IMG/VR virus record: IMGVR_UViG_3300028275_000006
Location: 124,001 to 188,000 of that record
Length of the DNA: 64,000 bases
Reading direction: 5' to 3' (one strand)
Shown here in pieces: positions 3,147 to 22,647 of the stretch. Position numbers and translations under genes: made by a program. Under the pieces are notes generated by a model. It searched no databases and was not told where the DNA came from. It saw only the letters and a list, made by a program, of their open reading frames with translations. Within the stretch, counting starts at the first letter, position 1, and the number at the start of each line of letters is the position of its first letter.

Positions 3147-3221
3147 TGGTCCCGCTACTACGAATCGAACGTAGACTTACTCTTTAGGAGAGAGTCGTTC
3201 TATCCATTGAACTATAGCGAG
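3147..3221 (-). tRNA. tRNA-Arg(CCT)
   Basis: Cloverleaf, loop CT-CCT-AA, encoded CCA. Confidence 0.9.
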
Positions 3222-3231
3222 GGAGGGAATT

Positions 3232-3339
3232 TGGTGTGACCGGGAGGGTTCGAACCTCCAAGGACGGCATATCGCCTAGTCCCGACCCACGGAGTGTTTC
3301 ACAACAGTCCTGGAGCTCTGCCTATTCGCTCACGGTCAC
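3232..3339 (-). ncRNA. atypical 108-nt tRNA-like RNA with expanded anticodon/variable region
   Basis: Acceptor GTGACCG/CGGTCAC-A-CCA, D arm and T arm GGAGG-TTCGAAC-CCTCC; no canonical anticodon arm. Confidence 0.7.
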
Positions 3340-3345
3340 ATACTA

Positions 3346-3374
3346 AGTATATAACCTTTTCAGCAGTTTGTCAA
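3346..3374 (-). promoter_or_regulatory. sigma70-type promoter for the 3339/3221 RNAs
   Basis: TTGACA-17nt-TATACT. Confidence 0.8.
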
Positions 3375-3811
3375 CGGGTTATGAGGTATTCGTAGTTCAC
3401 TGTGTTGTCGTTTTCTTGCAACACACAGGCACCATTTCTGATATGGAACTTGTAGGCCATTTCAGTTTTTGGGCTAAGTGTTACAAAACGATTAACAGTT
3501 GGGAAAAGTTCTTTTATTTGATCCACTACACCAAAAAGTAGCTCTGCGGCCGCACCCGGCGCATAACTCCAAATTGTATAGAAGATTGCTGTAGTTGGTT
3601 CTGTGGGTGTTTTAGCCAAATCTTCAACAGTTGTTGGCACAAAATCGTGCAGACTAACACAGACCATTGCACGTGGTTTTTCGCCTTCTACAGTGGTGGC
3701 GACAAATCTGCTACCGCTAACACGAAATTCTTTGGGAATTTCTGGACGTACTGGATCATCCTTGATATAGTCAAGTAATGGATTAGTAGTTTCTCTGATT
3801 AATGTTAGCAT
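3371..3811 (-). CDS. hypothetical protein, possibly GNAT-like fold
   Basis: ORF preceded by TAAATA; FYTIWSY..GAA and RFVTLSP motifs; fold is a guess. Confidence 0.6.
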   Translation of the reverse strand: MLTLIRETTNPLLDYIKDDPVRPEIPKEFRVSGSRFVATTVEGEKPRAMVCVSLHDFVPTTVEDLAKTPTEPTTAIFYTIWSYAPGAAAELLFGVVDQIKELFPTVNRFVTLSPKTEMAYKFHIRNGACVLQENDNTVNYEYLITR

Positions 3812-3849
3812 ATAACTATTTAGCATTTAGTGGGCAGATTATGGTGTTA

Positions 3850-3924
3850 TGGTGGTAACGGTGAGATTCGAACTCACACCTTGCTCCGTATGAAGGAGGT
3901 GCACGACCATTATGCTACGTTACC
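3850..3924 (-). tRNA. tRNA-Met or Ile2 (CAT), elongator
   Basis: Cloverleaf, paired G1-C72, loop TT-CAT-AC, CCA. Confidence 0.85.
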
Positions 3925-3927
3925 AGA

Positions 3928-4163
3928 TTATTAGTAAGATGTCCCGAGAGTTTTGGTTTGGGTAAGGCCATCCGACGGTGCGATTCGTCCCTCTCTTTGT
4001 CTAGCCCAACATGAAGTTCTTGTAGTCTCAATCCGCTCACCTTGCACCGGCGCTTGATACATATACTCTACAGCATTAAAGTTTATAACTTCAATTAACA
4101 AAAACTTCCGATCTTTGTTAACTCCTTGCGGATGCTTTTAGAACCTTAACTACTTACTAATAA
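3928..4163 (-). ncRNA. candidate stem-closed ncRNA F
   Basis: 11-bp terminal inverted repeat TTATTAGTAAG/CTTACTAATAA; internal hairpins incl. CCGCAAGG. Confidence 0.45.
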
Positions 4164-4165
4164 AA

Positions 4166-4434
4166 GGGGTGGAGAGAGAAAGGCAAGTAATAGACTGGAC
4201 AATGTACAAGCGGGCTCTATAAAGATACCCTTAACAAGTCACAAGGCGCAAAGCACAGGGACCTGTATATTTCCAGTTAGCAACTCACAAAGTCGATTAA
4301 TATATAGAACTGGTTCACACAAGCACGAAACGTTTTCAAGACGTTTTGCCAGTAGTTGATGTTCGGTCTCTATAAGAGATCAAACCTTAGGCATGTAGCC
4401 TAAGTCTGTCTATCCTAATCTCCTTCTCTACTCC
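4166..4434. ncRNA. candidate stem-closed ncRNA G
   Basis: Ends complementary over ~30 nt (GGGGTGGAGAGAGAAAGG..TAGAC / GTCTATCCT..TCTCTACTCC); no convincing ORF. Confidence 0.45.
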
Positions 4435-4463
4435 AGGCTCGGGCTTTCGCCTTTGCCAAAACT

Positions 4464-4537
4464 TGGTTGCGGGACCTGGAATCGAACCAGGATCTAGAGC
4501 TTATGAGACTCTTGAGTTACCGTTTCTCTATCCCGCG
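4464..4537 (-). tRNA. initiator-type tRNA-fMet(CAT)
   Basis: C1:A72 mismatch, loop CT-CAT-AA, CCA. Confidence 0.85.
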
Positions 4538-4541
4538 ATAA

Positions 4542-4676
4542 CTTTATAGGTGCTCTCTGTTCGACTCGAACGAAACCTGCTGAGCTCCTTATCTTCCTGG
4601 CACTTTCGGTGGGTAGTCGACTTAGCACCTAACTCGTGTTATCCAGTGTAGTTCAGCTCAGAGAGCATTTATAAAG
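4542..4676 (-). ncRNA. candidate stem-closed ncRNA A with T-loop-like hairpin
   Basis: Terminal stem CTTTATAAATGCTCTCTG/CAGAGAGCACCTATAAAG; TTCG-TTCGAGT-CGAA hairpin. Confidence 0.5.
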
Positions 4677-4872
4677 TGTCTAGCCACTCCCACCACAGGA
4701 GCCCTAAACCGAGCTGTTACTCTGTCCACTAGCCTTTCCATTTAGACGGTGCTGAGGTCCGCCTTTGTGATTTCTCAAGTCGCTTTAAACAAGCCTTGCG
4801 GTAGATCCAATGCACCGAGCCATTAAGGTGTAGCAATTACCTAACTCTATCACGCTGAGTTAACGCGGGGTC
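4677..4872 (-). ncRNA. candidate structured ncRNA H sharing a motif with the GOLLD-like RNA
   Basis: TAGTGGACAGAGTAACAG (4714-4731) is 15/18 identical to 7212-7229; CCGCAAGG hairpin. Confidence 0.5.
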
Positions 4873-4874
4873 TG

Positions 4875-5447
4875 TTACAGTAAACCTTCTGCTTGCAGAA
4901 CTGCTTCTGTTTTGTCAGACAATTGGATAGTTGTCTGAACATTTAACTCTAGGATTTCATCCTGAAGTTTTTGTTTCTGCTTTTTAGCAGTTGCCACTCT
5001 ACGACGGAATCCGTCTAGATCTTCACGAGTGAGCACACTAGTGTCTACTGTGTCGTTGTAGCCATAGATGCTACGACGGTTTTCGCTTTTGTCGTTACGG
5101 ATCTTGTCCAAACGACCTGCTACAACCTTTGCGCTTTCGCGAACGGTCTTACTAGCCAATCCGTTGTAGAATTGGATTTGTTTTTCTAGATGTGCAACAT
5201 CGGCCAATCTAGTGTCGATTCTAACTTCTGTGTTAGCACCGCTGACACTTTTACGAATCTCGTAAAGTGCTTCCACTAACGCATCTCTGCGTGTAAGGTT
5301 GTCGCAGAGTGTTCCTGCAACTTTGGAAATTTCTTGTTCCGCTTCTTGGAACTCGTTGATTTTTACTGTGGTCTCAAACTGGAAACCTTTGACGGTATCG
5401 TTGATACTGTTCTGAAGTGCATTTGCCTTACGTAGGGAGATATTCAT
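4875..5447 (-). CDS. coiled-coil hypothetical protein
   Basis: Start MNISLRKANALQ with RBS; heptad-rich; loosely reminiscent of DIP1984-type proteins. Confidence 0.7.
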   Translation of the reverse strand: MNISLRKANALQNSINDTVKGFQFETTVKINEFQEAEQEISKVAGTLCDNLTRRDALVEALYEIRKSVSGANTEVRIDTRLADVAHLEKQIQFYNGLASKTVRESAKVVAGRLDKIRNDKSENRRSIYGYNDTVDTSVLTREDLDGFRRRVATAKKQKQKLQDEILELNVQTTIQLSDKTEAVLQAEGLL

Positions 5448-5513
5448 TTGTTTTTCCTTTAATGTTTCTATTATACAATCTTTTAAATCTAAATCAATGC
5501 CTTTTGGCAAAAC

Positions 5514-5589
5514 TGGAGCGGGAGACGAGGTTCGAACTCGCGACATTTACCTTGGCAAGGTAATGCTCTACCAACTGAGCTACTCCCGC
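5514..5589 (-). tRNA. tRNA-Gly(GCC)
   Basis: Canonical cloverleaf with CCA. Confidence 0.95.
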
Positions 5590-5637
5590 ATATGAAGAAC
5601 CTAAGGCAAAGTTTATAACTTATCCAAAGGCCATATA

Positions 5638-5713
5638 TGGTACACGGTACGGGAATCGAACCCGTCTTACTGACGTGAAAGGCCAGTGTCCTAAACCGAT
5701 AGACGAACCGTGC
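5638..5713 (-). tRNA. tRNA-Glu(TTC)
   Basis: Canonical cloverleaf with CCA. Confidence 0.95.
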
Positions 5714-5719
5714 ATTACT

Positions 5720-5795
5720 TGGCTCCCCAGGGTGGGATCGAACCACCGACACCCTGATTAACAGTCAGGTGCTACTACCGCTGAGCTACTAGGGA
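5720..5795 (-). tRNA. tRNA-Asn(GTT)
   Basis: Canonical cloverleaf with CCA. Confidence 0.95.
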
Positions 5796-5802
5796 ATAAA
5801 CT

Positions 5803-5877
5803 TGGTACCTGGTGACAGTTTCGAACTGCCGACCCTCTCGGTGTAAACGAGACGCTCTACCACTGAGCTAACCAGGC
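5803..5877 (-). tRNA. tRNA-Val(TAC)
   Basis: Canonical cloverleaf with CCA. Confidence 0.95.
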
Positions 5878-5887
5878 AAACTAACAT

Positions 5888-5964
<77 letters not shown>

Positions 5965-5969
5965 AATGA

Positions 5970-6045
5970 TGGAGCGGGAGGCGAGAGTTGAACTCGTCTA
6001 TTTCAGTTTGGAAGACTGACGTGTAACCACAAACACTTCACCCGC
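5970..6045 (-). tRNA. tRNA-Gly(TCC)
   Basis: Cloverleaf, loop CT-TCC-AA, CCA. Confidence 0.9.
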
Positions 6046-6051
6046 ATATTT

Positions 6052-6135
6052 TGGTGCCCCAGGAGAGACTCGAACTCTCACGGCTCTCGCCACTGGCTTC
6101 TAAGACCAGCGTGTCTACCATTCCACCACCAGGGC
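6052..6135 (-). tRNA. tRNA-Leu(TAG)
   Basis: Class II cloverleaf with long variable arm, CCA. Confidence 0.95.
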
Positions 6136-6136
6136 A

Positions 6137-6940
6137 TTAACTGACAATACTATTTAAGTATTCCTGAATTGTCGTTGCAATTTTTTCTTGCACAGACAAT
6201 TTAATTTTTGCATTCTCACCATTAGCACTCATATACTGTTTTCCGTATTCAGTACAATCTATACCAGTGTGCATAAACTCTTTAAAAATTTCTGAGTTGT
6301 CAGGATTAGGATCTCCAAACCTAACAGTCGTCCATTTAATATTTTGAGAATCTAAAAACTTAATTAACATATTGTAACCATTTCTATGTCTACGAATATG
6401 CCAATCTTTGCTTTGACTTTTTTGAAAAGCAATACCGTTTAATCGCTTTTTATGAACTTCAATTGGATATCTATCTGGATTCCATTCTCCGTCTACATAA
6501 TTTTCACGTTCAAATACATATCGTTGATTGTTATATTTGAAACTGTGTGCTATATGACTAAACGTGTAATCTGTAACTAATACATGATCCGGTTTAGGAT
6601 TCTCTGCTAGGTACTGTTTTAATCTTTTGTGATGACCTATAAAATGTCCACCGTTAATAGATATATTAACTACATTGGAAACATTTAAGAAATTAGGCCA
6701 TGCGGCTTTTTGTTCTTCTTCCCATAGATAATGCCAAACAACATTTTCCATATTGCCATTGGGCATAGGTGTTGTAACATTGTTTTCTTTTCTATGTTTT
6801 AGATACCATTTAAAAACACTTCTAAAATCATTATGGAAACGTAGACTCCAAGTCCTCGGAGCATCGTCGTTGACTATGTCACCAGCCAAACAATTATTGC
6901 CATTACTTTGGCAATCTCCTAAAATTAAAAGTGTTTTCAT
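6137..6940 (-). CDS. hypothetical AT-rich protein with GDSL-like N-terminus, inserted in tRNA array
   Basis: 267 aa ORF; LILGDCQSNG resembles the SGNH block I motif. Confidence 0.65.
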   Translation of the reverse strand: MKTLLILGDCQSNGNNCLAGDIVNDDAPRTWSLRFHNDFRSVFKWYLKHRKENNVTTPMPNGNMENVVWHYLWEEEQKAAWPNFLNVSNVVNISINGGHFIGHHKRLKQYLAENPKPDHVLVTDYTFSHIAHSFKYNNQRYVFERENYVDGEWNPDRYPIEVHKKRLNGIAFQKSQSKDWHIRRHRNGYNMLIKFLDSQNIKWTTVRFGDPNPDNSEIFKEFMHTGIDCTEYGKQYMSANGENAKIKLSVQEKIATTIQEYLNSIVS

Positions 6941-6954
6941 ATTAATAGTTATCT

Positions 6955-7031
6955 TGGCGCACCGTAGGGGACTTGAACCCCTGGCCTCCGACGTGACAGG
7001 CCGGCGCTCTGACCAACTGAGCTAACGGTGC
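6955..7031 (-). tRNA. tRNA-Asp(GTC)
   Basis: Canonical cloverleaf with CCA. Confidence 0.95.
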
Positions 7032-7036
7032 AAATT

Positions 7037-7116
7037 CTATTCTGAAACACACTAACCAACTACCAGAAGCATTTATAATGCCGTTATTCGGTTCGAGCTA
7101 ATGTGTTTTAGAATAG
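7037..7116 (-). ncRNA. candidate stem-closed ncRNA C
   Basis: 20-nt terminal stem CTATTCTAAAACACATTAGC/GTTAGTGTGTTTCAGAATAG with one A:C mismatch. Confidence 0.5.
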
Positions 7117-8005
7117 TGCTAACGCTGAGATTATACGTTAGCCAATAGTGCCTCTAGCATTATAGTCAGCCTTGCGAGCCAACCTTCTCTAGACATCCAC
7201 ATAAGCCATTACTGTACCTATGTCCACTATCAGCATCGCCGTTTTTAAAGACAGGCAGTAGTCTTGTCGCCATATGCTATTCTACGCTATCTACTCCGTT
7301 GACCTTGCGAGCCATTCAGCGGCGCTAACCACTTACGAAACTTCCAGCATAAACAGATTTCACCTTGCGAGCTACGTCTGACTCGATTACCTTGCGGCTC
7401 GAGTATTAGATGCTTTTCACATATGACCGAGGCAGTCTTTGCATTTTATAATCGATAGTTGGGATCGAACCAACAGTCCATTGCTTAAGAGGCAATTGCG
7501 TTACCATTACGCTATATCAAACCTACCGCGATGAGCTGCCTCTGTTGCTCAATAACCTTTTGGATTACTGAATACAACTCACCACATACCTTTTGTCTCG
7601 CGGACTACTCAGTGATATTTCACGATCAATGTCCTGCATCAAAACAGTCCACTAACCATTAATATTGCATACAAGCCCTTAGGAGCGACCCCTTGGACAA
7701 ATACACTACCCTTTCTCATACCAATTCGCAAGTTGGTTTTGTTAGGAAGTCAGCACCACCCGTTACTTTTCATGCACCCTGGTTCCCTTGCGGGCCAGTC
7801 GATACACATTCTTTCCCTAACACTTGCTTCATTGTTACATCCACCGGTCTTCTCAGTGAACGCTACCTCGCGGTAGTGAGCAGGCTTGTTTACATGAACC
7901 ATTACTGGCGGAGTTGCGTAGGCTTACCTCCTTTGGGTTGATCACTCAACTTATTCTTCGTCAACGGCGAACCGCCAACAGGATAATAAACTACCCTTAA
8001 ATTTT
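7115..8005 (-). ncRNA. giant structured ncRNA, GOLLD-like, containing a tRNA
   Basis: ~900 nt without credible ORF; many GNRA-capped hairpins (CTCGCAAGG x3, CCGCAAGG x2, CCGCGAG x2); inside a phage tRNA cluster; boundaries approximate. Confidence 0.7.
7450..7521 (-). tRNA. tRNA-Lys(CTT) embedded in giant ncRNA, no encoded CCA
   Basis: Intact D, anticodon (ATTGC-CT-CTT-AA-GCAAT) and T arms; weak acceptor stem. Confidence 0.8.
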
Positions 8006-8171
8006 TACCATTAAAAAATAACATTACACCCTATGGGATGAAACGTATTTCTGAGTGGAGTTCGATTCTCCTCATAAGCCATTGTTCACGGTTTTCTCAG
8101 AAGGGTAAGATGGCCTTATCCTTCATAAGTCTATGCGTCCATAGACGATACCCGTCAATGCTATTTCTTAA

Positions 8172-8257
8172 TGGTGGATGCGGCTGGAGTCGAACCAGCA
8201 GTGCCGTAAGGCGGCGGATTTACAGTCCACTGGGGTTACCAATTTTCCTACACATCC
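8172..8257 (-). tRNA. tRNA-Tyr(GTA)
   Basis: Class II cloverleaf with CCA. Confidence 0.95.
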
Positions 8258-8344
8258 ATATCTGCTTGAAATTTTTAAAGAACTAGGTTAATTTCTTAAC
8301 TAGTCTCTATTGTATATGAACTTTAGAAACTAGTCAAGACATTT

Positions 8345-8439
8345 TGGCAGTGAGTAAGGGATTCGAACCCTTGATCCCCGTTTTTGCAGGAATGCCTTCT
8401 TAGCAGGAAGGTGCCTTCGACCAGCTCGGCCAACTCACT
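8345..8439 (-). tRNA. tRNA-Ser(GCT)
   Basis: Class II cloverleaf with CCA. Confidence 0.95.
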
Positions 8440-8447
8440 ATATTTGT

Positions 8448-8476
8448 ATTATACGATCAACTGTTAAACAAGTCAA
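8448..8476 (-). promoter_or_regulatory. internal sigma70-type promoter in tRNA array
   Basis: TTGACT-17nt-TATAAT; a similar TTGACT/TACAAT site lies near 8310-8338. Confidence 0.75.
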
Positions 8477-8483
8477 CACCTTT

Positions 8484-8573
8484 TGGCCGAAGCGGTGAGA
8501 TTCGAACTCACGGACCCTTTCGGATCGTCTGTTTTCAAGACAGGTGCAATAAACCGGACTCTGCCACGCTTCG
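8484..8573 (-). tRNA. tRNA-Ser(TGA)
   Basis: Class II cloverleaf with CCA. Confidence 0.95.
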
Positions 8574-8619
8574 TTGTTTTACTTGTATAATTCGTTGTAG
8601 ATAGAATCTGCTACAAATG

Positions 8620-8697
8620 TGGTACCCCTGCTCCGATTCGAACGGAGAGAACTTCTCCTTTTGAGAGAGACGACTTTACCAATTTGTCCACAGGGGT
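8620..8697 (-). tRNA. tRNA-Leu(CAA), short variable loop
   Basis: Loop CT-CAA-AA, 6-nt variable region, CCA. Confidence 0.85.
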
Positions 8698-8702
8698 ATA
8701 TC

Positions 8703-8776
8703 TGGTGCTCAAGGAAAGAATCGAACTTTCGATTGTGTCGTACCAAGACACTGGTATACCATTTACCTACAAGAGC
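8703..8776 (-). tRNA. tRNA-Thr(GGT)
   Basis: Loop TT-GGT-AC, two acceptor mismatches, CCA. Confidence 0.8.
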
Positions 8777-8778
8777 CT

Positions 8779-8850
8779 TGGCGCCTCTGAGTAGATTCGA
8801 ACTACTATAACCTGGTTTAGAAGACCTGGCACTGCTCCATCAGCAGAGGC
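8779..8850 (-). tRNA. tRNA-Arg(TCT), reduced D arm
   Basis: 72 nt, loop CT-TCT-AA, CCA. Confidence 0.8.
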
Positions 8851-8851
8851 A

Positions 8852-8928
8852 TGGTACCCTTGGTTGGATTCGAACCTACACACAACGGATTTTAAATCCA
8901 TTCGCATTACCAATTAGCGTACAAGGGC
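8852..8928 (-). tRNA. tRNA-Leu(TAA), short variable loop
   Basis: Loop TT-TAA-AA, 5-nt variable region, CCA. Confidence 0.85.
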
Positions 8929-8935
8929 ATAATTA

Positions 8936-9011
8936 TGGTGCCGCCCCTTGGGATCGAACCAAGTTCCTCGGTGCTTCAAACCGGTGCAATGACCACATTT
9001 GCTAAAGCGGC
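8936..9011 (-). tRNA. tRNA-Phe(GAA)
   Basis: Cloverleaf, loop TT-GAA-GC, CCA. Confidence 0.9.
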
Positions 9012-9017
9012 GATATT

Positions 9018-9092
9018 TGGGGTGAAGCCGGGAATCGAACCCTGCCTTACTGTTTCACAGACAGCCGTGCGGACCACTACACTAGCAACACC
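9018..9092 (-). tRNA. tRNA-His(GTG)
   Basis: G-1:C73, loop CT-GTG-AA, CCA. Confidence 0.9.
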
Positions 9093-9094
9093 AT

Positions 9095-9171
9095 TGGCCG
9101 GCCCTGAGAGACTCGAACTCCCAACCTCCAGTTTCGAAGACTGGCACTCTAATCCATTGAGTTAAGGACCG
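9095..9171 (-). tRNA. tRNA-Arg(TCG)
   Basis: Cloverleaf, A20, CCA. Confidence 0.92.
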
Positions 9172-9178
9172 TTAAAAT

Positions 9179-9252
9179 TGGCAGGCCTACCAGGACTCGA
9201 ACCTGGAACGACTGAGTCAAAGTCAGTTGTGTTACCATTACACCATAGGCCA
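9179..9252 (-). tRNA. tRNA-Gln(TTG)
   Basis: Cloverleaf, weak 1:72 pair, CCA. Confidence 0.93.
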
Positions 9253-9262
9253 ACAGATTGAA

Positions 9263-9475
9263 TTTGTAAGTAGTTGCCCCATCGTTATAGCAACCATTCA
9301 CCCATGTATATAAAGCCGGCTGGGACTCGGTACGTCACTTGGGATACTAGTCCAGTTAGCAACCAATCTGCAGGGATCTTCCGATCCCCCGGGAGTTGAA
9401 CCCGTCCCCTTTTACTATTAAGGTAGTTCGAACTTACCTACAATAGCGTGACATTCTCTTGCTGACACTTACAAA
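9263..9475 (-). ncRNA. candidate stem-closed ncRNA E
   Basis: Terminal TTTGTAAGT/ACTTACAAA; internal CGGG-TTCAACT-CCCG T-arm-like hairpin and GGGATCGGAAGATCCC hairpin. Confidence 0.5.
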
Positions 9476-9478
9476 ACT

Positions 9479-9553
9479 TGGTGCCCCAGGATGGAATCGA
9501 ACCACCACACCCTGCTTACAAAACAGGACCTCTACCACTAAGGATACAAGGGC
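9479..9553 (-). tRNA. tRNA-Thr(TGT)
   Basis: Cloverleaf with CCA. Confidence 0.92.
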
Positions 9554-9558
9554 AAAAT

Positions 9559-9636
9559 TGGTCTCCACGGTACGATTCGAACGTACAGCCTCCTGACTCC
9601 AGATCAGGCCGTCTACCAGATTGACATTACGCAGAG
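9559..9636 (-). tRNA. tRNA-Pro(TGG) variant with C33 and A37
   Basis: Stem CCTGA/TCAGG, loop TC-TGG-AG, CCA. Confidence 0.75.
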
Positions 9637-9646
9637 ATAAAAATAA

Positions 9647-9722
9647 TTGCGACCGAAGGACTCGAACCTTCGCGGTAATCTAGAATGCCCCGGCAAGGCC
9701 GGTTAACCCACCATTGTCGCAA
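9647..9722 (-). pseudogene. tRNA-like element without CCA or valid anticodon arm
   Basis: TTGCGAC/GTCGCAA stem plus perfect T arm GAAGG-TTCGAGT-CCTTC. Confidence 0.5.
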
Positions 9723-9725
9723 ATT

Positions 9726-9800
9726 TGGTGGAGGCCGAGGAAATCGAATCCTTCTAGACATCTTCCTTGCAAGGGAAGACCGTAGCCCACTACTGCCCCC
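9726..9800 (-). tRNA. tRNA-Ala(TGC), reduced D loop
   Basis: G3:U70, loop CT-TGC-AA, D hairpin GTAG-TGGG-CTAC, CCA. Confidence 0.8.
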
Positions 9801-9885
9801 AAATTGGTGTTAGTTTCTATACCACCCATTGAAACTAACAAACATTGAGAGAACATGGATGAACCCACAAGATCTCTATTTGCTC

Positions 9886-9960
9886 TGGTATAGCGTACGG
9901 GGATCGAACCCGCCTAGTCACCTTGAAAGGGTGATGACCTCCCCAGAAGTCGAACGCTAT
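9886..9960 (-). tRNA. tRNA-Glu(TTC), second copy
   Basis: Cloverleaf, loop CT-TTC-AA, CCA. Confidence 0.9.
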
Positions 9961-9966
9961 GTAAAT

Positions 9967-10040
9967 TGGTTCCTGGACCGAGAATTGAACTCAGAATGAC
10001 CGGTTATCAGCCGATTGTTATACCATTTAACTATCCAGGA
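9967..10040 (-). tRNA. tRNA-Ile(GAT)
   Basis: Cloverleaf with CCA. Confidence 0.93.
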
Positions 10041-10130
10041 ATAATACTATACAAAAAGAAACTAACGACAATGCGCTATGCACCCAGAGTCTATAGTTCC
10101 TGGCTGTGGTTAGTTTGTTTTTATACACTA

Positions 10131-10225
10131 CCATATGGAAGCACTCTTATGCCTTTTTCGTCATAAGATGGTGGCCCGTCCTTACTACTGACGCTATGCG
10201 ACCAGTTAAGAATGCTTTCATATGG
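10131..10225 (-). ncRNA. candidate stem-closed ncRNA B
   Basis: CCATATGAAAGCATTCTTA/TAAGAGTGCTTCCATATGG with one A:C mismatch; begins at the CCA of tRNA-Lys(TTT). Confidence 0.5.
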
Positions 10226-10297
10226 TAGGGGCACAGAGAATCGAACTCTGATTTACGGGTTAAAAGCCCGCTACTTTAACCATTAAGTTATACCCCC
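10223..10297 (-). tRNA. tRNA-Lys(TTT)
   Basis: Cloverleaf with CCA. Confidence 0.93.
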
Positions 10298-10300
10298 ATA

Positions 10301-10376
10301 TGGTCCCTGCTGTGAGATTCGAACTCACACCTCATTGATTAAGAGTCAAGTGCGCTACCATTGACGCTAAACAGGG
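10301..10376 (-). tRNA. tRNA-Lys(CTT)
   Basis: Cloverleaf with CCA. Confidence 0.92.
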
Positions 10377-10438
10377 TTGTACGTATTGATTTGATTTTAC
10401 GTGCCAACCCTAGACCATACGGGAGATCTAGAGTGACA

Positions 10439-10459
10439 CTAACGTTTAGCACGTTTCAT
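10439..10459 (-). CDS. micro-ORF MKRAKR-amber
   Basis: Strong SD AAGGAGAG; TAG stop leads into a long hairpin. Confidence 0.4.
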   Translation of the reverse strand: MKRAKR

Positions 10460-10471
10460 GCTACTCTCCTT

Positions 10472-10534
10472 TTAATATTTTTTCAAAACTTGATACAACA
10501 CGAACATTATAACTAACACTACAAGTACTGCCAT
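10472..10534 (-). CDS. 20-aa hydrophobic micro-protein MAVLVVLVIMFVLYQVLKKY
   Basis: SD TAAGGAG, single TM-like stretch. Confidence 0.55.
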   Translation of the reverse strand: MAVLVVLVIMFVLYQVLKKY

Positions 10535-10547
10535 AATATTCTCCTTA

Positions 10548-10637
10548 TGGTCCCCCGTTGAGGAATCGAACCTCATCCTGGACCTTATCTAGATTAATCG
10601 GTTATAAGCCGACCTGCTCTCCATGAGCTAACGGGGG
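10548..10637 (-). tRNA. tRNA-Ile(TAT) with 21-nt variable insertion
   Basis: Stem GTCGG/CCGAT, loop CT-TAT-AA, 90 nt, CCA. Confidence 0.8.
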
Positions 10638-10645
10638 ATATAACC

Positions 10646-10723
10646 TGGAGCAACGGGTCAGATTTGAACTGACGGTTTTACGGATTTGCAATCCGTTGCA
10701 TTGGGCCTCTCTGCCACCGTTGC
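10646..10723 (-). tRNA. tRNA-Cys(GCA)
   Basis: Cloverleaf, U73, CCA. Confidence 0.93.
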
Positions 10724-10728
10724 ATTAT

Positions 10729-10803
10729 TGGCGTACCCCCAGGGACTCGAACCCCGACTAGCAGTTTTGGAGACTGTCGTGCTGCCATTAACACTAGGGA
10801 TAC
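10729..10803 (-). tRNA. tRNA-Trp(CCA)
   Basis: Cloverleaf, G73, CCA. Confidence 0.93.
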
Positions 10804-10826
10804 ATAACACTCTCTTTCGAAAGTGT

Positions 10827-10888
10827 GTATTAAAGCATACTACTCATCGGCTACTGCCATTTGATTGTTCGGCAGTATGCTTTAATAC
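10827..10888 (-). ncRNA. candidate stem-closed ncRNA D
   Basis: Perfect 15-bp stem GTATTAAAGCATACT/AGTATGCTTTAATAC around a 32-nt loop. Confidence 0.45.
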
Positions 10889-11003
10889 GCTACCTTTTTA
10901 CACATTCTAGTTATCGCCTAGAACTTACCATCCGGTAGGCCGCCCACATTAAGCCCATGTTTTACGTGCAGGCAGGGTCGCGTTCCCTATAACACGTTTG
11001 AGA

Positions 11004-11174
11004 TTAGTCTTGCTCTACGAGCTCAACTTCTCTCTTGTAAAGTGCTGTGTGATAAGCACGAGCACGATTAAACTTTTCTTCGATGAGTTTTTCAAAAGCA
11101 TCGTCGTCCAGTTCATGCTCACTTAGCACTTTGGCACTTTTCTGTTTTCTAAAATCTTCAAAATTCATTTTCAT
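11004..11174 (-). CDS. 56-aa hypothetical protein (not in ORF track)
   Basis: MKMNFEDFRKQKSAKVLSEHELDDDAFEKLIEEKFNRARAYHTALYKREVELVEQD; first gene after the attenuator. Confidence 0.6.
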   Translation of the reverse strand: MKMNFEDFRKQKSAKVLSEHELDDDAFEKLIEEKFNRARAYHTALYKREVELVEQD

Positions 11175-11192
11175 TTCCAAATCTTACAAAAC

Positions 11193-11224
11193 AAAAAACC
11201 CTGGGTTTTTAGTCCAGGGTTCTT
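11193..11224 (-). terminator. intrinsic terminator of putative attenuator
   Basis: AAGAACCCTGG-ACTAAAAAC-CCAGGGTTTTTT. Confidence 0.8.
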
Positions 11225-15926: not shown

Positions 15927-16000
15927 TGGTGCGCTAGACAGGAATCGAACCTGCTATCGGGAGTTTAGAAGTCCCTGCCTATCCATTGAGCTTCAAGCGC
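15927..16000 (-). tRNA. Arg(TCT)-derived tRNA; best-paired register gives anticodon CTA
   Basis: 74 nt; GGGAC-TTCTAAA-CTCCC arm; A20; CCA. Confidence 0.7.
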
Positions 16001-21632: not shown

Positions 21633-21712
21633 GTGATCTTTCTATGAAATAAAACTGCGATACTGTGTATTATAGGCTCGGACAGGGCATCTGTCAATGT
21701 GTTTGGTAAAAT

Positions 21713-21735
21713 AAAAAAGGGCCCGAAGGCCCTTT
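21713..21735 (-). terminator. terminator after tmRNA
   Basis: AAAGGGCC-TTCG-GGCCC hairpin followed by T6. Confidence 0.8.
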
Positions 21736-21739
21736 GGTT

Positions 21740-22066
21740 GTTTGGGTTACAAGGTAAGTCCTACCCCGGAGTTGCAGTTTCTTAGGCTGCTACTAGACCA
21801 TTGTCGGCTGTGAAGCCTTCAACAGTGAAGTACTCAAATGTAGATGCGTTTGCATTTACTAGTTTTGCTTGATTTACGGTCATCGCCTACCGTGTTGCCG
21901 TCTCTACTATCTACCCCTGTCGAAACCATGGCAGGCCCATCATAAAAACACAATACCAAAGTAAATTTACAATGAATACCAAAGTAAATTTATGTCCTTA
22001 TGGTGGACCTGGCGGGAGTCGAACCCGCGTCCAGAAGTCCTTCGCTTTGAAGGGATTACAACAATT
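21740..22066 (-). ncRNA. ssrA: circularly permuted (two-piece) tmRNA
   Basis: Acceptor piece ending GGTTCGACTCCCGCCAGGTCCACCA (22001) precedes coding piece starting GGGCCTG (21938); G3:U70; tag frame 21782-21853 ANASTFEYFTVEGFTADNGLVAA*. Confidence 0.9.
21952..21992. repeat. 18-nt tandem direct repeat in tmRNA intervening segment
   Basis: AATACCAAAGTAAATTTA at 21952-21969 and 21975-21992. Confidence 0.9.
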
Positions 22067-22068
22067 CT

Positions 22069-22647
22069 TTAAACGCCTGCCTTTGCTAATGTGCCAAATA
22101 TCCAAGGTTTTGGATCTAAGTCAATTGTCCAAGATGTCGGTTCATTTCTCATATCTTTTTTGTACACAATATTTATTTGGTCGTGTGTTAGTTTGACTAA
22201 GAAGCCGTCTGTTAATTGTTTTAGATTAGCCTTAACTGTTGCGTAATCTACAAAGGCAACAGCGAATGTTCCTTTAATTTGGACTATCATTAAATGATTA
22301 AAAACTTTGTCTAGTGTAGTTCTTTGATTCTTACTTTCGTAAACATTTTTTAATTTAAGACTGATTGTCTTTTTAGGAGTTCCTGACTTTGCGTAGAACA
22401 AAGGTTCGTTGCCAGTTTTAACTTCTACGTCGCCATTGGTCCAATCGGTAAATTTTATATCGTAATCGCGAACGTCAGTCCACTCGATGTTCTTTTTATG
22501 ATTAGATAATTGCATTGCCGCAATAATGAATTTTTCTTTCATCATTCGATTTGTGGATTCATTTAATACTGTCTGATGACAGATGTTATTACAAGCATCT
22601 GAAAACTTGTCAATATCTACCCAATCTAAAAATTCATTGTACTGCAT
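22069..22647 (-). CDS. hypothetical protein, possible PD-(D/E)xK nuclease fold
   Basis: AT-rich; D..GDVEVKT motif. Confidence 0.55.
   Translation of the reverse strand: MQYNEFLDWVDIDKFSDACNNICHQTVLNESTNRMMKEKFIIAAMQLSNHKKNIEWTDVRDYDIKFTDWTNGDVEVKTGNEPLFYAKSGTPKKTISLKLKNVYESKNQRTTLDKVFNHLMIVQIKGTFAVAFVDYATVKANLKQLTDGFLVKLTHDQINIVYKKDMRNEPTSWTIDLDPKPWIFGTLAKAGV

What the first reader, a model, noticed from the sequence alone, without database searches (positions are those of the whole stretch)
7425..7545. CCA-less tRNA-Lys(CTT) mounted inside the giant RNA
Seen: the tRNA is flanked by GAGGCAG/CTGCCTC, which closes it as a domain of the larger RNA. It is the only array tRNA without CCA, and a normal Lys(CTT) exists at 10301. 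Inference: it is a structural module or an RNase P/Z processing switch that cuts the giant RNA, rather than a decoder.
Basis: partly seen in the sequence, partly recalled or inferred. Interest (0 to 1): 0.6.

Follow-up and report, generated by a model that had tools for sequence, protein, structure and literature searches.

The report
tRNA-shaped domain inside phage GOLLD RNA
The "giant RNA" is a GOLLD RNA, a known cage-forming phage RNA of unknown function, and the CCA-less tRNA-Lys inside it is best read as a built-in tRNA-shaped domain, not a working tRNA; tRNAs in GOLLD RNAs are already known, but this clade gives testable clues to their role.

Summary
A tRNA-Lys(CUU)-like cloverleaf (7450-7521, minus strand) lies in the variable linker of a GOLLD RNA (Rfam RF02032, 207 bits; about 7100-8000). 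It is bracketed by GAGGCAG (7542-7536) and CUGCCUC (7435-7429). It is the only one of 33 tRNAs in the window without an encoded CCA.

The bracketing helix is not special to the tRNA. It is GOLLD's own linker-closing pseudoknot: 33 of 36 GOLLDs keep 7/7 pairs, with 19 different helix sequences.

The tRNA is an insert found in one clade (river phages, Caulobacter phages, Sinorhizobium phage Phosso). In that clade:
- D, anticodon and T stems covary.
- Acceptor pairs 1-3 form in only about half of 22 sequences.
- 0 of 23 inserts encode CCA, against 292 of 297 free tRNAs.
- The anticodon drifts (CUU, UUU, GUU, AUU, UCU, UGU, GAU, UAU), but U33 and U36 never change.
- The inserts form their own lineage and are the most variable part of the RNA.

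In three river metatranscriptomes GOLLD is about 100-1000 times deeper than its flanks. One abundant RNA contig runs uncut through the tRNA's 3' junction.

Verdict: a non-decoding tRNA-like domain of a known RNA class. A cutting switch is unsupported but not excluded. tRNAs in GOLLD linkers are already published.

The parts
7100..8000 (-). Whole GOLLD RNA, about 880 nt; both ends approximate
   Evidence: Rfam hit 7122-7585. Conservation of the 5' domain among 21 homologues begins near 8000. RNA depth is high across 7073-8057 and falls on both sides; one RNA contig ends at 7981 followed by adapter letters.
7586..8000 (-). GOLLD 5' domain; the Rfam model does not cover it
   Evidence: Column identity is 0.6-0.87 from about 8000 to 7586, against about 0.3 upstream. 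RNA depth there is 3400-11000.
7528..7585 (-). First hairpin of the 3' domain: outer stem (P13 in my labelling) 7585-7579 with 7534-7528, inner stems (P14) 7578-7544
   Evidence: Rfam alignment. Helices 1 and 2 are 98-100% paired, and 14 of their 21 pairs change on both sides.
7536..7542 (-). Pseudoknot arm A, GAGGCAG, in the internal loop between the inner and outer stems
   Evidence: Pairs with 7429-7435. Helix 3 is 100% paired in 22 sequences; 33 of 36 GOLLDs have 7/7 pairs.
7520..7527 (-). Near-invariant leader GGUAGGUU; its last two bases are acceptor positions 1-2
   Evidence: Invariant or at least 90% conserved columns in alignment A1. It stays conserved whether or not the 3' strand is complementary.
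7450..7521 (-). Embedded tRNA-like domain. Anticodon CUU at 7489-7487; acceptor 6 of 7 pairs with a U1.U72 mismatch; no CCA
7436..7449 (-). A-rich trailer AUAAAAUGCAAAGA joining the tRNA-like domain to arm A'
   Evidence: Alignment A1. Its motif served as my first search pattern, so its conservation in that sample is circular.
7429..7435 (-). Pseudoknot arm A', CUGCCUC, directly before stem P15
7122..7428 (-). Rest of the conserved GOLLD 3' domain (P15 to P27)
   Evidence: Rfam alignment to model positions 146-416. RNA depth is 1300-40000.
10301..10376 (-). Free, canonical tRNA-Lys(CUU) with 7/7 acceptor pairs and CCA; it makes the embedded copy redundant
   Evidence: It is only 0.70 identical to the embedded copy.
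8172..8257 (-). tRNA-Tyr upstream of GOLLD, preceded by a promoter-like site (8337-8309)
6955..7031 (-). tRNA-Asp about 90 nt downstream of the GOLLD 3' end

Best explanation
The locus is a GOLLD RNA of about 880 nt, made by an uncultured river phage from within its tRNA array. One GOLLD clade has filled the RNA's variable linker with a dedicated tRNA-shaped domain. The linker is the loop closed by the conserved pseudoknot, GAGGCAG/CUGCCUC in this window.

Shown here:
- The domain keeps an L-shaped tRNA core. The D, anticodon and T stems covary. U8, A14, G18, G19, U33, G53, U54, U55, C56, A58 and C61 are conserved.
- It has lost what a decoder needs: a full acceptor stem, a CCA end and a fixed anticodon.
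- It stays covalently joined to the GOLLD 3' domain in abundant cellular RNA.

Inferred from published cryo-EM of other GOLLDs: once GOLLD assembles into its 10- to 14-mer cage, each chain displays one tRNA-shaped domain on the inner face.

Inferred mechanism: the domain is a tethered tRNA mimic that binds or sequesters a factor recognising the tRNA elbow and a U33...U36-A37-A38 anticodon loop. It is neither translated with nor released. The identity of that factor is unknown.
For: Identity and site:
- GOLLD identity, with the tRNA placed in the unstructured linker columns of the model.
- The same site holds a tRNA-like element in Sinorhizobium phage Phosso, Caulobacter phage CcrMagneto and about 22 IMG/VR contigs.

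Cloverleaf kept, acceptor end lost:
- D stem 100% paired, anticodon stem 99%, T stem 98%; 12 of these 14 pairs change on both sides.
- Acceptor pairs 4:69 to 7:66 form in 21-22 of 22 sequences. Pairs 1:72, 2:71 and 3:70 form in only 13, 10 and 11 of 22. One of 22 has a full 7-bp stem, against 254 of 297 free tRNAs.
- CCA is encoded in 0 of 23 embedded copies and in 292 of 297 free tRNAs of the same loci.

Anticodon:
- Position 34 is U8/G7/C6/A1. Position 35 is U in 18 of 22. U33 and U36 are invariant. A37 and A38 are each present in 20 of 22.
- One copy has the unnatural anticodon AUU and one has an 8-nt loop.

Lineage:
- Embedded copies resemble one another (0.70-1.00; 0.80 or more for 19 of 23) across different anticodons. 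None is closer than 0.78 to any free tRNA, and same-anticodon free tRNAs of the same locus score only 0.55-0.70.

Expression:
- RNA depth over 7073-8057 is 1300-40000 in three river metatranscriptomes, against 0-18 over the neighbouring ORF and 17-76 in a DNA run.
- A 157-nt RNA contig at depth 1142 covers 7392-7548 without a single difference.

Literature:
- In a Mycobacterium GOLLD, a northern blot detected no separate expression of the embedded pseudo-tRNA (PMC6582537).
Against: - The expression data are assembled contigs summed over related strains, not reads. They cannot show RNA ends, strand or stoichiometry.
- The 157-nt contig clears the tool's 31-letter bridging rule only at the tRNA's 3' junction. 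It extends just 26 letters past the 5' junction.
- No binding partner is known. The cage arrangement is borrowed from other GOLLDs (env-38, S. agalactiae), whose linkers hold no tRNA.
- Covariation cannot tell whether the closing helix forms within one chain or between chains of the oligomer.
- Lack of CCA is also what RNase Z substrates look like.
- LysRS and AsnRS read mainly the anticodon (from my own knowledge). A change at position 34 need not abolish charging if the domain were released.
Confidence: 0.62

Rival explanations
1. Latent or stored tRNA, or a processing site. This covers "inhibited storage" and the first reader's RNase P/Z switch. The domain is a real tRNA precursor held uncut inside the cage. 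When the cage opens or fails to assemble, RNase P and RNase Z excise it, the host CCA-adding enzyme completes it, and GOLLD is split into its 5' and 3' halves.
For: - A CCA-less 3' end is the usual mark of RNase Z substrates, from my own knowledge of tRNA processing.
- The review PMC12990946 proposes this for the Mycolicibacterium tRNA-Phe in J13/15.
- The 5' and 3' domains are structurally separate.
- The cloverleaf core is under strong selection.
Against: - The outer three acceptor pairs form in only 45-59% of sequences, and only 1 of 22 has a full stem.
- Anticodon AUU and an 8-nt anticodon loop occur.
- Same-anticodon free tRNAs are already present.
- An uncut 3' junction exists in abundant RNA.
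- No pseudo-tRNA band was seen in Mycobacterium.
- The leader and trailer touching the tRNA are more conserved than its acceptor stem.
Confidence: 0.2
2. An ordinary tRNA-Lys gene that merely sits in a tolerant, variable spot of GOLLD. It would be released and used in translation like the rest of the array, which is how the GenBank records of the Caulobacter phages annotate it.
For: - It scores as a tRNA: 62.5 bits in Rfam, and ARAGORN calls it Lys(ctt).
- It is annotated tRNA-Lys in CcrMagneto, Karma, Swift and others.
- GOLLDs lie within tRNA arrays.
Against: All the comparative results count against it:
- 0 of 23 with CCA against 98% of free tRNAs.
- Frayed acceptor stem.
- Anticodon not conserved among orthologous inserts.
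- A lineage separate from the free tRNAs.
- Redundancy with a canonical Lys(CUU) at 10301-10376.

Confidence: 0.05
3. A decaying pseudogene: a dead tRNA caught in a variable linker, with no function of its own.
For: It has no CCA, a mismatched acceptor end and a drifting anticodon. Behra et al. call the mycobacterial one a pseudo-tRNA.
Against: - The three inner stems are 98-100% paired with many compensatory changes, and all the tertiary-contact nucleotides are conserved, across relatives whose GOLLD scaffolds share only about 55-65% identity.
- The element is kept in nearly every member of the clade.
- Only one clade-like relative, L255, has replaced it with a plain hairpin.
Confidence: 0.08

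Closest known systems
GOLLD RNA (Rfam RF02032; Weinberg et al. 2009; cryo-EM in Kretsch et al. 2025, PMC12286853)
   Same: A full-length match to the 3'-domain model. The 5' domain of about 400 nt is variable. It lies in a phage tRNA array and is very abundant as RNA. It has the linker-closing pseudoknot, and the tRNA sits in the linker, as already reported to happen "sometimes".
   Different: In this clade the tRNA-like insert is present in all but one sampled relative, not occasional. None of 13 other GOLLDs sampled independently of the linker has one. Oligomer formation was not tested here.
Mycobacterial GOLLD with an internal pseudo-tRNA or tRNA-Phe (PMC6582537; Morgado et al. 2020, cited in PMC12990946)
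   Same: A tRNA-like gene at the same J13/15 linker site, inside a large horizontally acquired tRNA array. No separate tRNA transcript was detected.
   Different: The nominal identity differs (Phe there; Lys, Asn and other NNU anticodons here), and so do the hosts. I could not read Morgado 2020 (not held), so I cannot say whether CCA status or acceptor fraying was examined there.
Internal tRNA-like structures cut out by RNase P/Z (MALAT1 mascRNA; from my own knowledge)
   Same: A cloverleaf embedded in a long non-coding RNA without an encoded CCA.
   Different: Those are efficient processing sites with intact acceptor stems. Here the acceptor end is frayed and uncut RNA is abundant.
tRNA-mimicking domains of bacterial Y RNA-like YrlA, and the tmRNA tRNA-like domain (Chen et al. 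2014, cited in PMC9569102; from my own knowledge)
   Same: A non-decoding RNA keeps the tRNA elbow and T-arm as a protein-recognition surface.
   Different: Those mimic the acceptor/T-arm half, and tmRNA is charged. Here the anticodon arm is retained and the acceptor end is lost.

Membership tests
GOLLD RNA (RF02032) | Covariance-model score at or above the curated gathering score, over the full model | tested here: met
   207.2 bits against 150, model positions 1-416 of 416, E 1.5e-57.
GOLLD RNA (RF02032) | Variable linker closed by a conserved, covarying helix between the first hairpin and P15 | tested here: met
   GAGGCAG/CUGCCUC. The helix is 100% paired in 22 clade members, with 3 pairs changed on both sides. 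33 of 36 GOLLDs have 7/7 pairs, with 19 distinct helices.
GOLLD RNA (RF02032) | A large, less conserved 5' domain, giving a total length of about 800 nt or more | tested here: met
   Conservation runs from about 8000 to 7586. The expressed span is about 7073-8057.
GOLLD RNA (RF02032) | Encoded by phages or prophages next to tRNA clusters, and expressed at a high level | tested here: met
   An IMG/VR virus record with 31 tRNAs within 3147-10803. RNA depth is 100-1000 times that of the flanks in 3 metatranscriptomes.
GOLLD RNA (RF02032) | Self-assembly into a closed 10- to 14-mer nanocage with the linker inside | not testable with these tools
   Known only from cryo-EM of env-38 and S. agalactiae GOLLD.
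Functional decoding tRNA | Cloverleaf with conserved tertiary nucleotides | tested here: met
   62.5 bits in the Rfam tRNA model. D, anticodon and T stems are 98-100% paired, and the U8, A14, G18, G19, U54, U55, C56 and A58 columns are conserved.
Functional decoding tRNA | Complete 7-bp acceptor stem | tested here: not met
   The window has a U1.U72 mismatch. Pairs 1-3 form in 10-13 of 22 homologues, and 1 of 22 has a full stem, against 86% of free tRNAs.
Functional decoding tRNA | A 3' CCA end, encoded as in the rest of this phage's tRNAs | tested here: not met
   0 of 23 embedded copies against 292 of 297 free tRNAs. In the window, all 32 others have it.
Functional decoding tRNA | Anticodon conserved among orthologues | tested here: not met
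   CUU, UUU, GUU, AUU, UCU, UGU, GAU and UAU occur within one lineage. For example, L024 (GUU) and L112 (UUU) are 95% identical.
Functional decoding tRNA | Released from its precursor as a molecule of about 75 nt | tested here: inconclusive
   An uncut 3' junction exists in an RNA contig of depth 1142. Contigs cannot show ends, and standard RNA-seq recovers tRNAs poorly.

The most novel reading that the evidence does not exclude
The caged tRNA-shaped domain is a hypervariable bait. Ten to fourteen copies per GOLLD particle would display an anticodon loop with fixed U33 and U36-A37-A38 and a free position 34. That is the signature of tRNAs that read ANN codons. The bait would titrate a host factor that recognises or cuts such tRNAs, for example an anticodon nuclease of an anti-phage defence system, or a position-37 modification enzyme. 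The exchange of tRNA cassettes between otherwise near-identical GOLLD scaffolds would then reflect an arms race. If so, GOLLD would be an RNA-only counter-defence organelle.
Probability: 0.1. Interest if true: 0.85.

Novelty: new member of a known kind. Interest (0 to 1): 0.42.

Why it matters
GOLLD is one of the largest bacterial and phage non-coding RNAs. Its cage structure is solved, but its function has been unknown since 2009.

This clade offers a handle on that question. The cage's internal linker is not disordered filler here. It is a selected tRNA-shaped domain with a specific pattern of constraint: elbow and U33/U36-A37-A38 kept, acceptor end and position 34 free.

Members occur in cultivable systems: Caulobacter phages of the CcrMagneto/Karma/Swift group and Sinorhizobium phage Phosso. 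"What does the cage hold or bind?" therefore becomes an ordinary pull-down, northern and deletion experiment.

There is also an annotation point. These inserts are currently annotated as ordinary tRNA-Lys genes and inflate phage tRNA counts.

Tried and rejected
- Pattern scans. The first pattern gave 119 loci, of which about 25 were real GOLLDs; the rest were chance matches. The second pattern, at the 3' end and independent of the linker, also gave mostly chance matches. Rfam scoring of their records found 13 further full GOLLDs.
- nhmmer. A profile built from my clade could not see the distant GOLLDs.
- Handle limits.
- Helix searches. An unconstrained search for the best helix per sequence was not specific, because shuffles often did as well. 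One search had an indexing bug and is void. One search is the corrected, position-anchored version. Its AAAG anchor misses L250, whose arms I read by eye as CUCGAAG/CUUCGAG.
- Nested fold. The minimum-energy fold pairs the leader GGUAG with arm A' in place of the pseudoknot. I rejected this because arm A' covaries with arm A while the leader is invariant.
- Partner of the leader. I looked for a partner of the leader GGUAGGUU, such as the published L20-J13/15 kissing loop, and found no convincing complement. This is left open.
- tRNA-repair enzymes. The 212-kb record showed no CCA-adding enzyme (PF01743), RtcB (PF01139) or T4 RNA ligase 1 (PF09511). This is uninformative: the record is about 55% complete, and PF09511 matched none of the control genomes either.
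- Depth within GOLLD. The depth differences between parts of GOLLD (for example 7270-7466 being 3-4 times deeper) were deliberately not interpreted. They are sums of contig depths over several strains.
- Papers. Weinberg 2009 and Morgado 2020 are not held. Statements about them come from papers that cite them.
- Neighbouring ORF. The ORF at 6137-6940 gave only a sub-threshold RbcX hit in Pfam (E 0.03) and nothing in PHROGs.
- Large protein searches. None was needed.

Full report
**What is in the window.** The window is part of a 212.5-kb IMG/VR virus record estimated to be about 55% complete. That estimate implies a jumbo phage, which is my inference. Its minus strand carries 31 tRNA genes between 3147 and 10803, plus two more tRNAs and a permuted tmRNA further on. 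Rfam places a full-length GOLLD match (RF02032) at 7122-7585, minus strand. It scores 207.2 bits against a gathering score of 150, E 1.5e-57. The Rfam model covers only the conserved 3' domain.

**Extent of the RNA.** Among 21 homologues, upstream conservation begins near 8000. In metatranscriptomes the abundant RNA spans about 7073-8057, and one contig ends at 7981 followed by sequencing-adapter letters. The whole RNA is therefore about 880 nt, roughly 8000 to 7100. It lies about 170 nt downstream of tRNA-Tyr (8172-8257), which has a promoter-like site at 8337-8309. It ends about 90 nt upstream of tRNA-Asp (6955-7031).

The embedded tRNA is 7449-7522 by ARAGORN and 7450-7521 by Rfam (62.5 bits), with anticodon CUU at 7489-7487. 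On the RNA strand it is bracketed by GAGGCAG (7542-7536) and CUGCCUC (7435-7429). Every other tRNA in the window encodes CCA. ARAGORN ends tRNA-His one base short, but its CCA is present. The embedded tRNA runs straight into AUAAAAUGCAAAGA. A canonical Lys(CUU) with CCA lies at 10301-10376.

**What the flanking helix is.** In the Rfam alignment the tRNA fills the unpaired linker columns between the first hairpin of the 3' domain and stem P15. I label that hairpin's outer stem P13 and its inner stems P14. Arm A of the flanking helix sits in the internal loop between P14 and the 3' strand of P13. Arm A' sits directly before P15. The helix therefore encloses the P13 3' strand as well as the linker, which makes it a pseudoknot.

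Evidence for the helix:
- In 22 aligned relatives it is 100% paired, with changes on both sides at three of seven pairs. Variants include GAGACAG/CUGUCUC, GGACCAG/CUGGUCC, GUGGCAG/CUGCCAC, GAGUCAG/CUGACUC, GGAGCAG/CUGCUCC and GUAGCAG/CUGCUAC.
- For the whole tested structure, no shuffle out of 500 reaches the observed pairing or covariation, and sliding the partners destroys both.
- I drew a second GOLLD sample with a motif at the far 3' end, so it is independent of the linker. It gave 13 more full GOLLDs. None has a tRNA in the linker, yet they keep the same helix with quite different letters.
- Over all 36 GOLLDs, 33 have 7/7 pairs, with 19 distinct helix sequences.

The helix is thus a core GOLLD element that closes the variable linker. 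The tRNA is a clade-specific filling of that loop. Covariation cannot tell whether the helix forms within one chain or between chains of the oligomer.

**Homologues.** The same site holds a tRNA-like element in three groups:
- Sinorhizobium phage Phosso (469 kb).
- Caulobacter phages of the CcrMagneto, Karma, Swift, Ccr5 and RBC57 group, where it is annotated as an ordinary tRNA-Lys.
- About 22 IMG/VR contigs.

One relative with the clade's flanks (L255) has a plain hairpin there instead. My first sample was drawn with the trailer motif AAAAYGCAAAGACTG, so conservation of that motif within the sample is circular.

**Properties of the insert.**
1. The cloverleaf core is under selection. The D stem is 100% paired, the anticodon stem 99% and the T stem 98%, and 12 of these 14 pairs change on both sides. 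The columns I map to U8, A14, G18, G19, U33, G53, U54, U55, C56, A58 and C61 are invariant or at least 90% conserved.
2. The acceptor end is not maintained. In canonical register, pairs 4:69 to 7:66 form in 21-22 of 22 sequences. Pairs 1:72, 2:71 and 3:70 form in only 13, 10 and 11 of 22. Only one sequence has a full 7-bp stem. Among free tRNAs of the same loci, 254 of 297 have one. The window itself has a U1.U72 mismatch.
3. The leader GGUAGGUU, which supplies positions 1-2, is nearly invariant whatever lies opposite it. It is probably constrained by GOLLD, not by the tRNA.
4. CCA is encoded in 0 of 23 inserts and in 292 of 297 free tRNAs.
5. The anticodon is not conserved. CUU, UUU, GUU, AUU, UCU, UGU, GAU and UAU all occur. 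Position 34 is essentially free, and position 35 is U in 18 of 22. U33 and U36 are invariant, and A37 and A38 are each present in 20 of 22. Every anticodon seen ends in U, so nominally all would read ANN codons. One insert has the unnatural AUU and one has an 8-nt loop.
6. The inserts are one lineage. For 19 of 23, the closest relative is another insert at 0.80-1.00 identity, often with a different anticodon. The other four are the most divergent scaffolds (L107, L017, CcrMagneto, L057), at 0.70-0.72. No free tRNA comes closer than 0.78, and same-anticodon free tRNAs of the same locus are only 0.55-0.70 identical.
7. The insert is the most variable part of the RNA. Mean pairwise identity is 0.63, against 0.79 and 0.82 for the two flanks. 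L105 and L028 share a 100% identical 5' flank and a 93% identical 3' flank, but their inserts are only 47% identical.
8. The read data agree with point 7. In all three RNA runs laid, contigs follow the window up to 7447 or 7520 and then continue with the letters of a different T-arm or D-arm. A joint from 7447 to 7520 also occurs in one RNA run (X20) and in the DNA run X1. Co-occurring strains therefore carry different tRNA cassettes in near-identical scaffolds.

**Expression.** The stretch is held in 18 river metagenomes and 6 river metatranscriptomes. I laid three RNA runs and one DNA run on 5300-11200 (5901 letters).

| Region | RNA runs (summed word depth) | DNA run |
|---|---|---|
| GOLLD, 7073-8057 | 1300-40000 | 17-76 |
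| Neighbouring ORF, 6088-7072 | 0-18 | 7-24 |

A 157-nt RNA contig at depth 1142 covers 7392-7548 with no differences. It contains the whole insert, 57 letters beyond its 3' junction and 26 beyond its 5' junction. Only the 3' junction meets the tool's 31-letter bridging rule.

These are contigs summed over related strains. They show that abundant RNA exists in which the insert is still joined to the 3' domain. They cannot show ends, strand or proportions. I draw no conclusion from depth differences within GOLLD.

**Mechanism.** Published cryo-EM shows that GOLLD forms closed 10- to 14-mer cages. [quoted passage not shown] A 2026 review proposes "inhibited storage" of an embedded tRNA-Phe in Mycolicibacterium (PMC12990946). 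In Mycobacterium, a northern blot found GOLLD but no separate pseudo-tRNA (PMC6582537).

Combining this with my results, the best-supported reading is a permanent, non-decoding tRNA-shaped domain, tethered inside the cage by the linker-closing pseudoknot. It would act as a tRNA mimic for some factor that reads the elbow and the U33/U36-A37-A38 loop (confidence about 0.6).

The alternatives:
- A conditional RNase P/Z cut, or release of a stored tRNA, remains possible (about 0.2). It fits poorly with the frayed acceptor end, the conserved leader and trailer, the odd anticodons, the redundancy and the uncut RNA.
- An ordinary decoder (about 0.05) contradicts the CCA, acceptor-stem and anticodon tallies.
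- A dead pseudogene (about 0.08) contradicts the covariation.

**Novelty.** GOLLD, its place in phage tRNA arrays and tRNAs in its linker are all published, so the finding is a new member of a known kind. I could not find the following in the papers I could read:
- The clade-wide tallies: no CCA, an acceptor stub of 4 bp, a free position 34 with fixed U36-A37, and cassette-like hypervariability.
- The metatranscriptome evidence for an uncut junction.
- The presence of this clade in cultivable Caulobacter and Sinorhizobium phages.
Morgado 2020 and Weinberg 2009 were not available to me, so parts of this may already be described.

Noticed in passing
window 9253-9478 (-): An unannotated structured RNA of about 225 nt lies in the gap between tRNA-Gln and tRNA-Thr. 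It has no Rfam match. It is conserved in 7 related phage loci. RNAalifold predicts 44 pairs, 18 of them with compensatory changes. It contains a T-arm-like GGGUUCAACUCCC. RNA depth is 890-2100 in three metatranscriptomes against 50 in the DNA run. It is a candidate new phage ncRNA class.
   Followed up: partly
window 15927-16000 (-): A tRNA with anticodon CUA, which ARAGORN labels "Pyl", has an encoded CCA. It looks like an amber suppressor and could point to TAG being read through in part of this phage's genes. I did not test the genetic code.
   Followed up: no
window 10548-10637 (-) and 9563-9635 (-): The tRNA-Ile(UAU) is unusually long at 90 nt and may carry an insertion or intron. A weak extra tRNA match (31.6 bits) was missed by ARAGORN.
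   Followed up: no
window 21691-22093 (-); L002:1607-2047: A permuted (two-piece type) tmRNA is encoded by the phage. CcrMagneto has one directly beside its GOLLD.
   Followed up: no
window 6137-6940 (-): A 267-aa ORF lies between tRNA-Leu and tRNA-Asp, just downstream of GOLLD. It has only a sub-threshold RbcX hit in Pfam (E 0.03) and no PHROG match. By eye its N-terminus (ILGDCQSNG) resembles an SGNH/GDSL hydrolase motif. In mycobacteria an HNH endonuclease gene co-localises with GOLLD in these tRNA clusters (PMC9569102).
   Followed up: partly
window 8000-8170 (-): A spacer of about 170 nt between tRNA-Tyr and the conserved start of GOLLD is not conserved among homologues. Its RNA depth is far lower than that of GOLLD. 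It includes a terminator-like hairpin at 8040-8027.
   Followed up: partly
L255 (= L009 record), GOLLD at G107:C1:73711-74137: This relative has the flanks typical of the clade (GGUUG leader, AAAAUGCAAAGACUG trailer, closing helix GGGUCAG/CUGACUC). Its linker is a plain hairpin of about 60 nt, not a tRNA. It is a natural "insert-less" comparison.
   Followed up: partly
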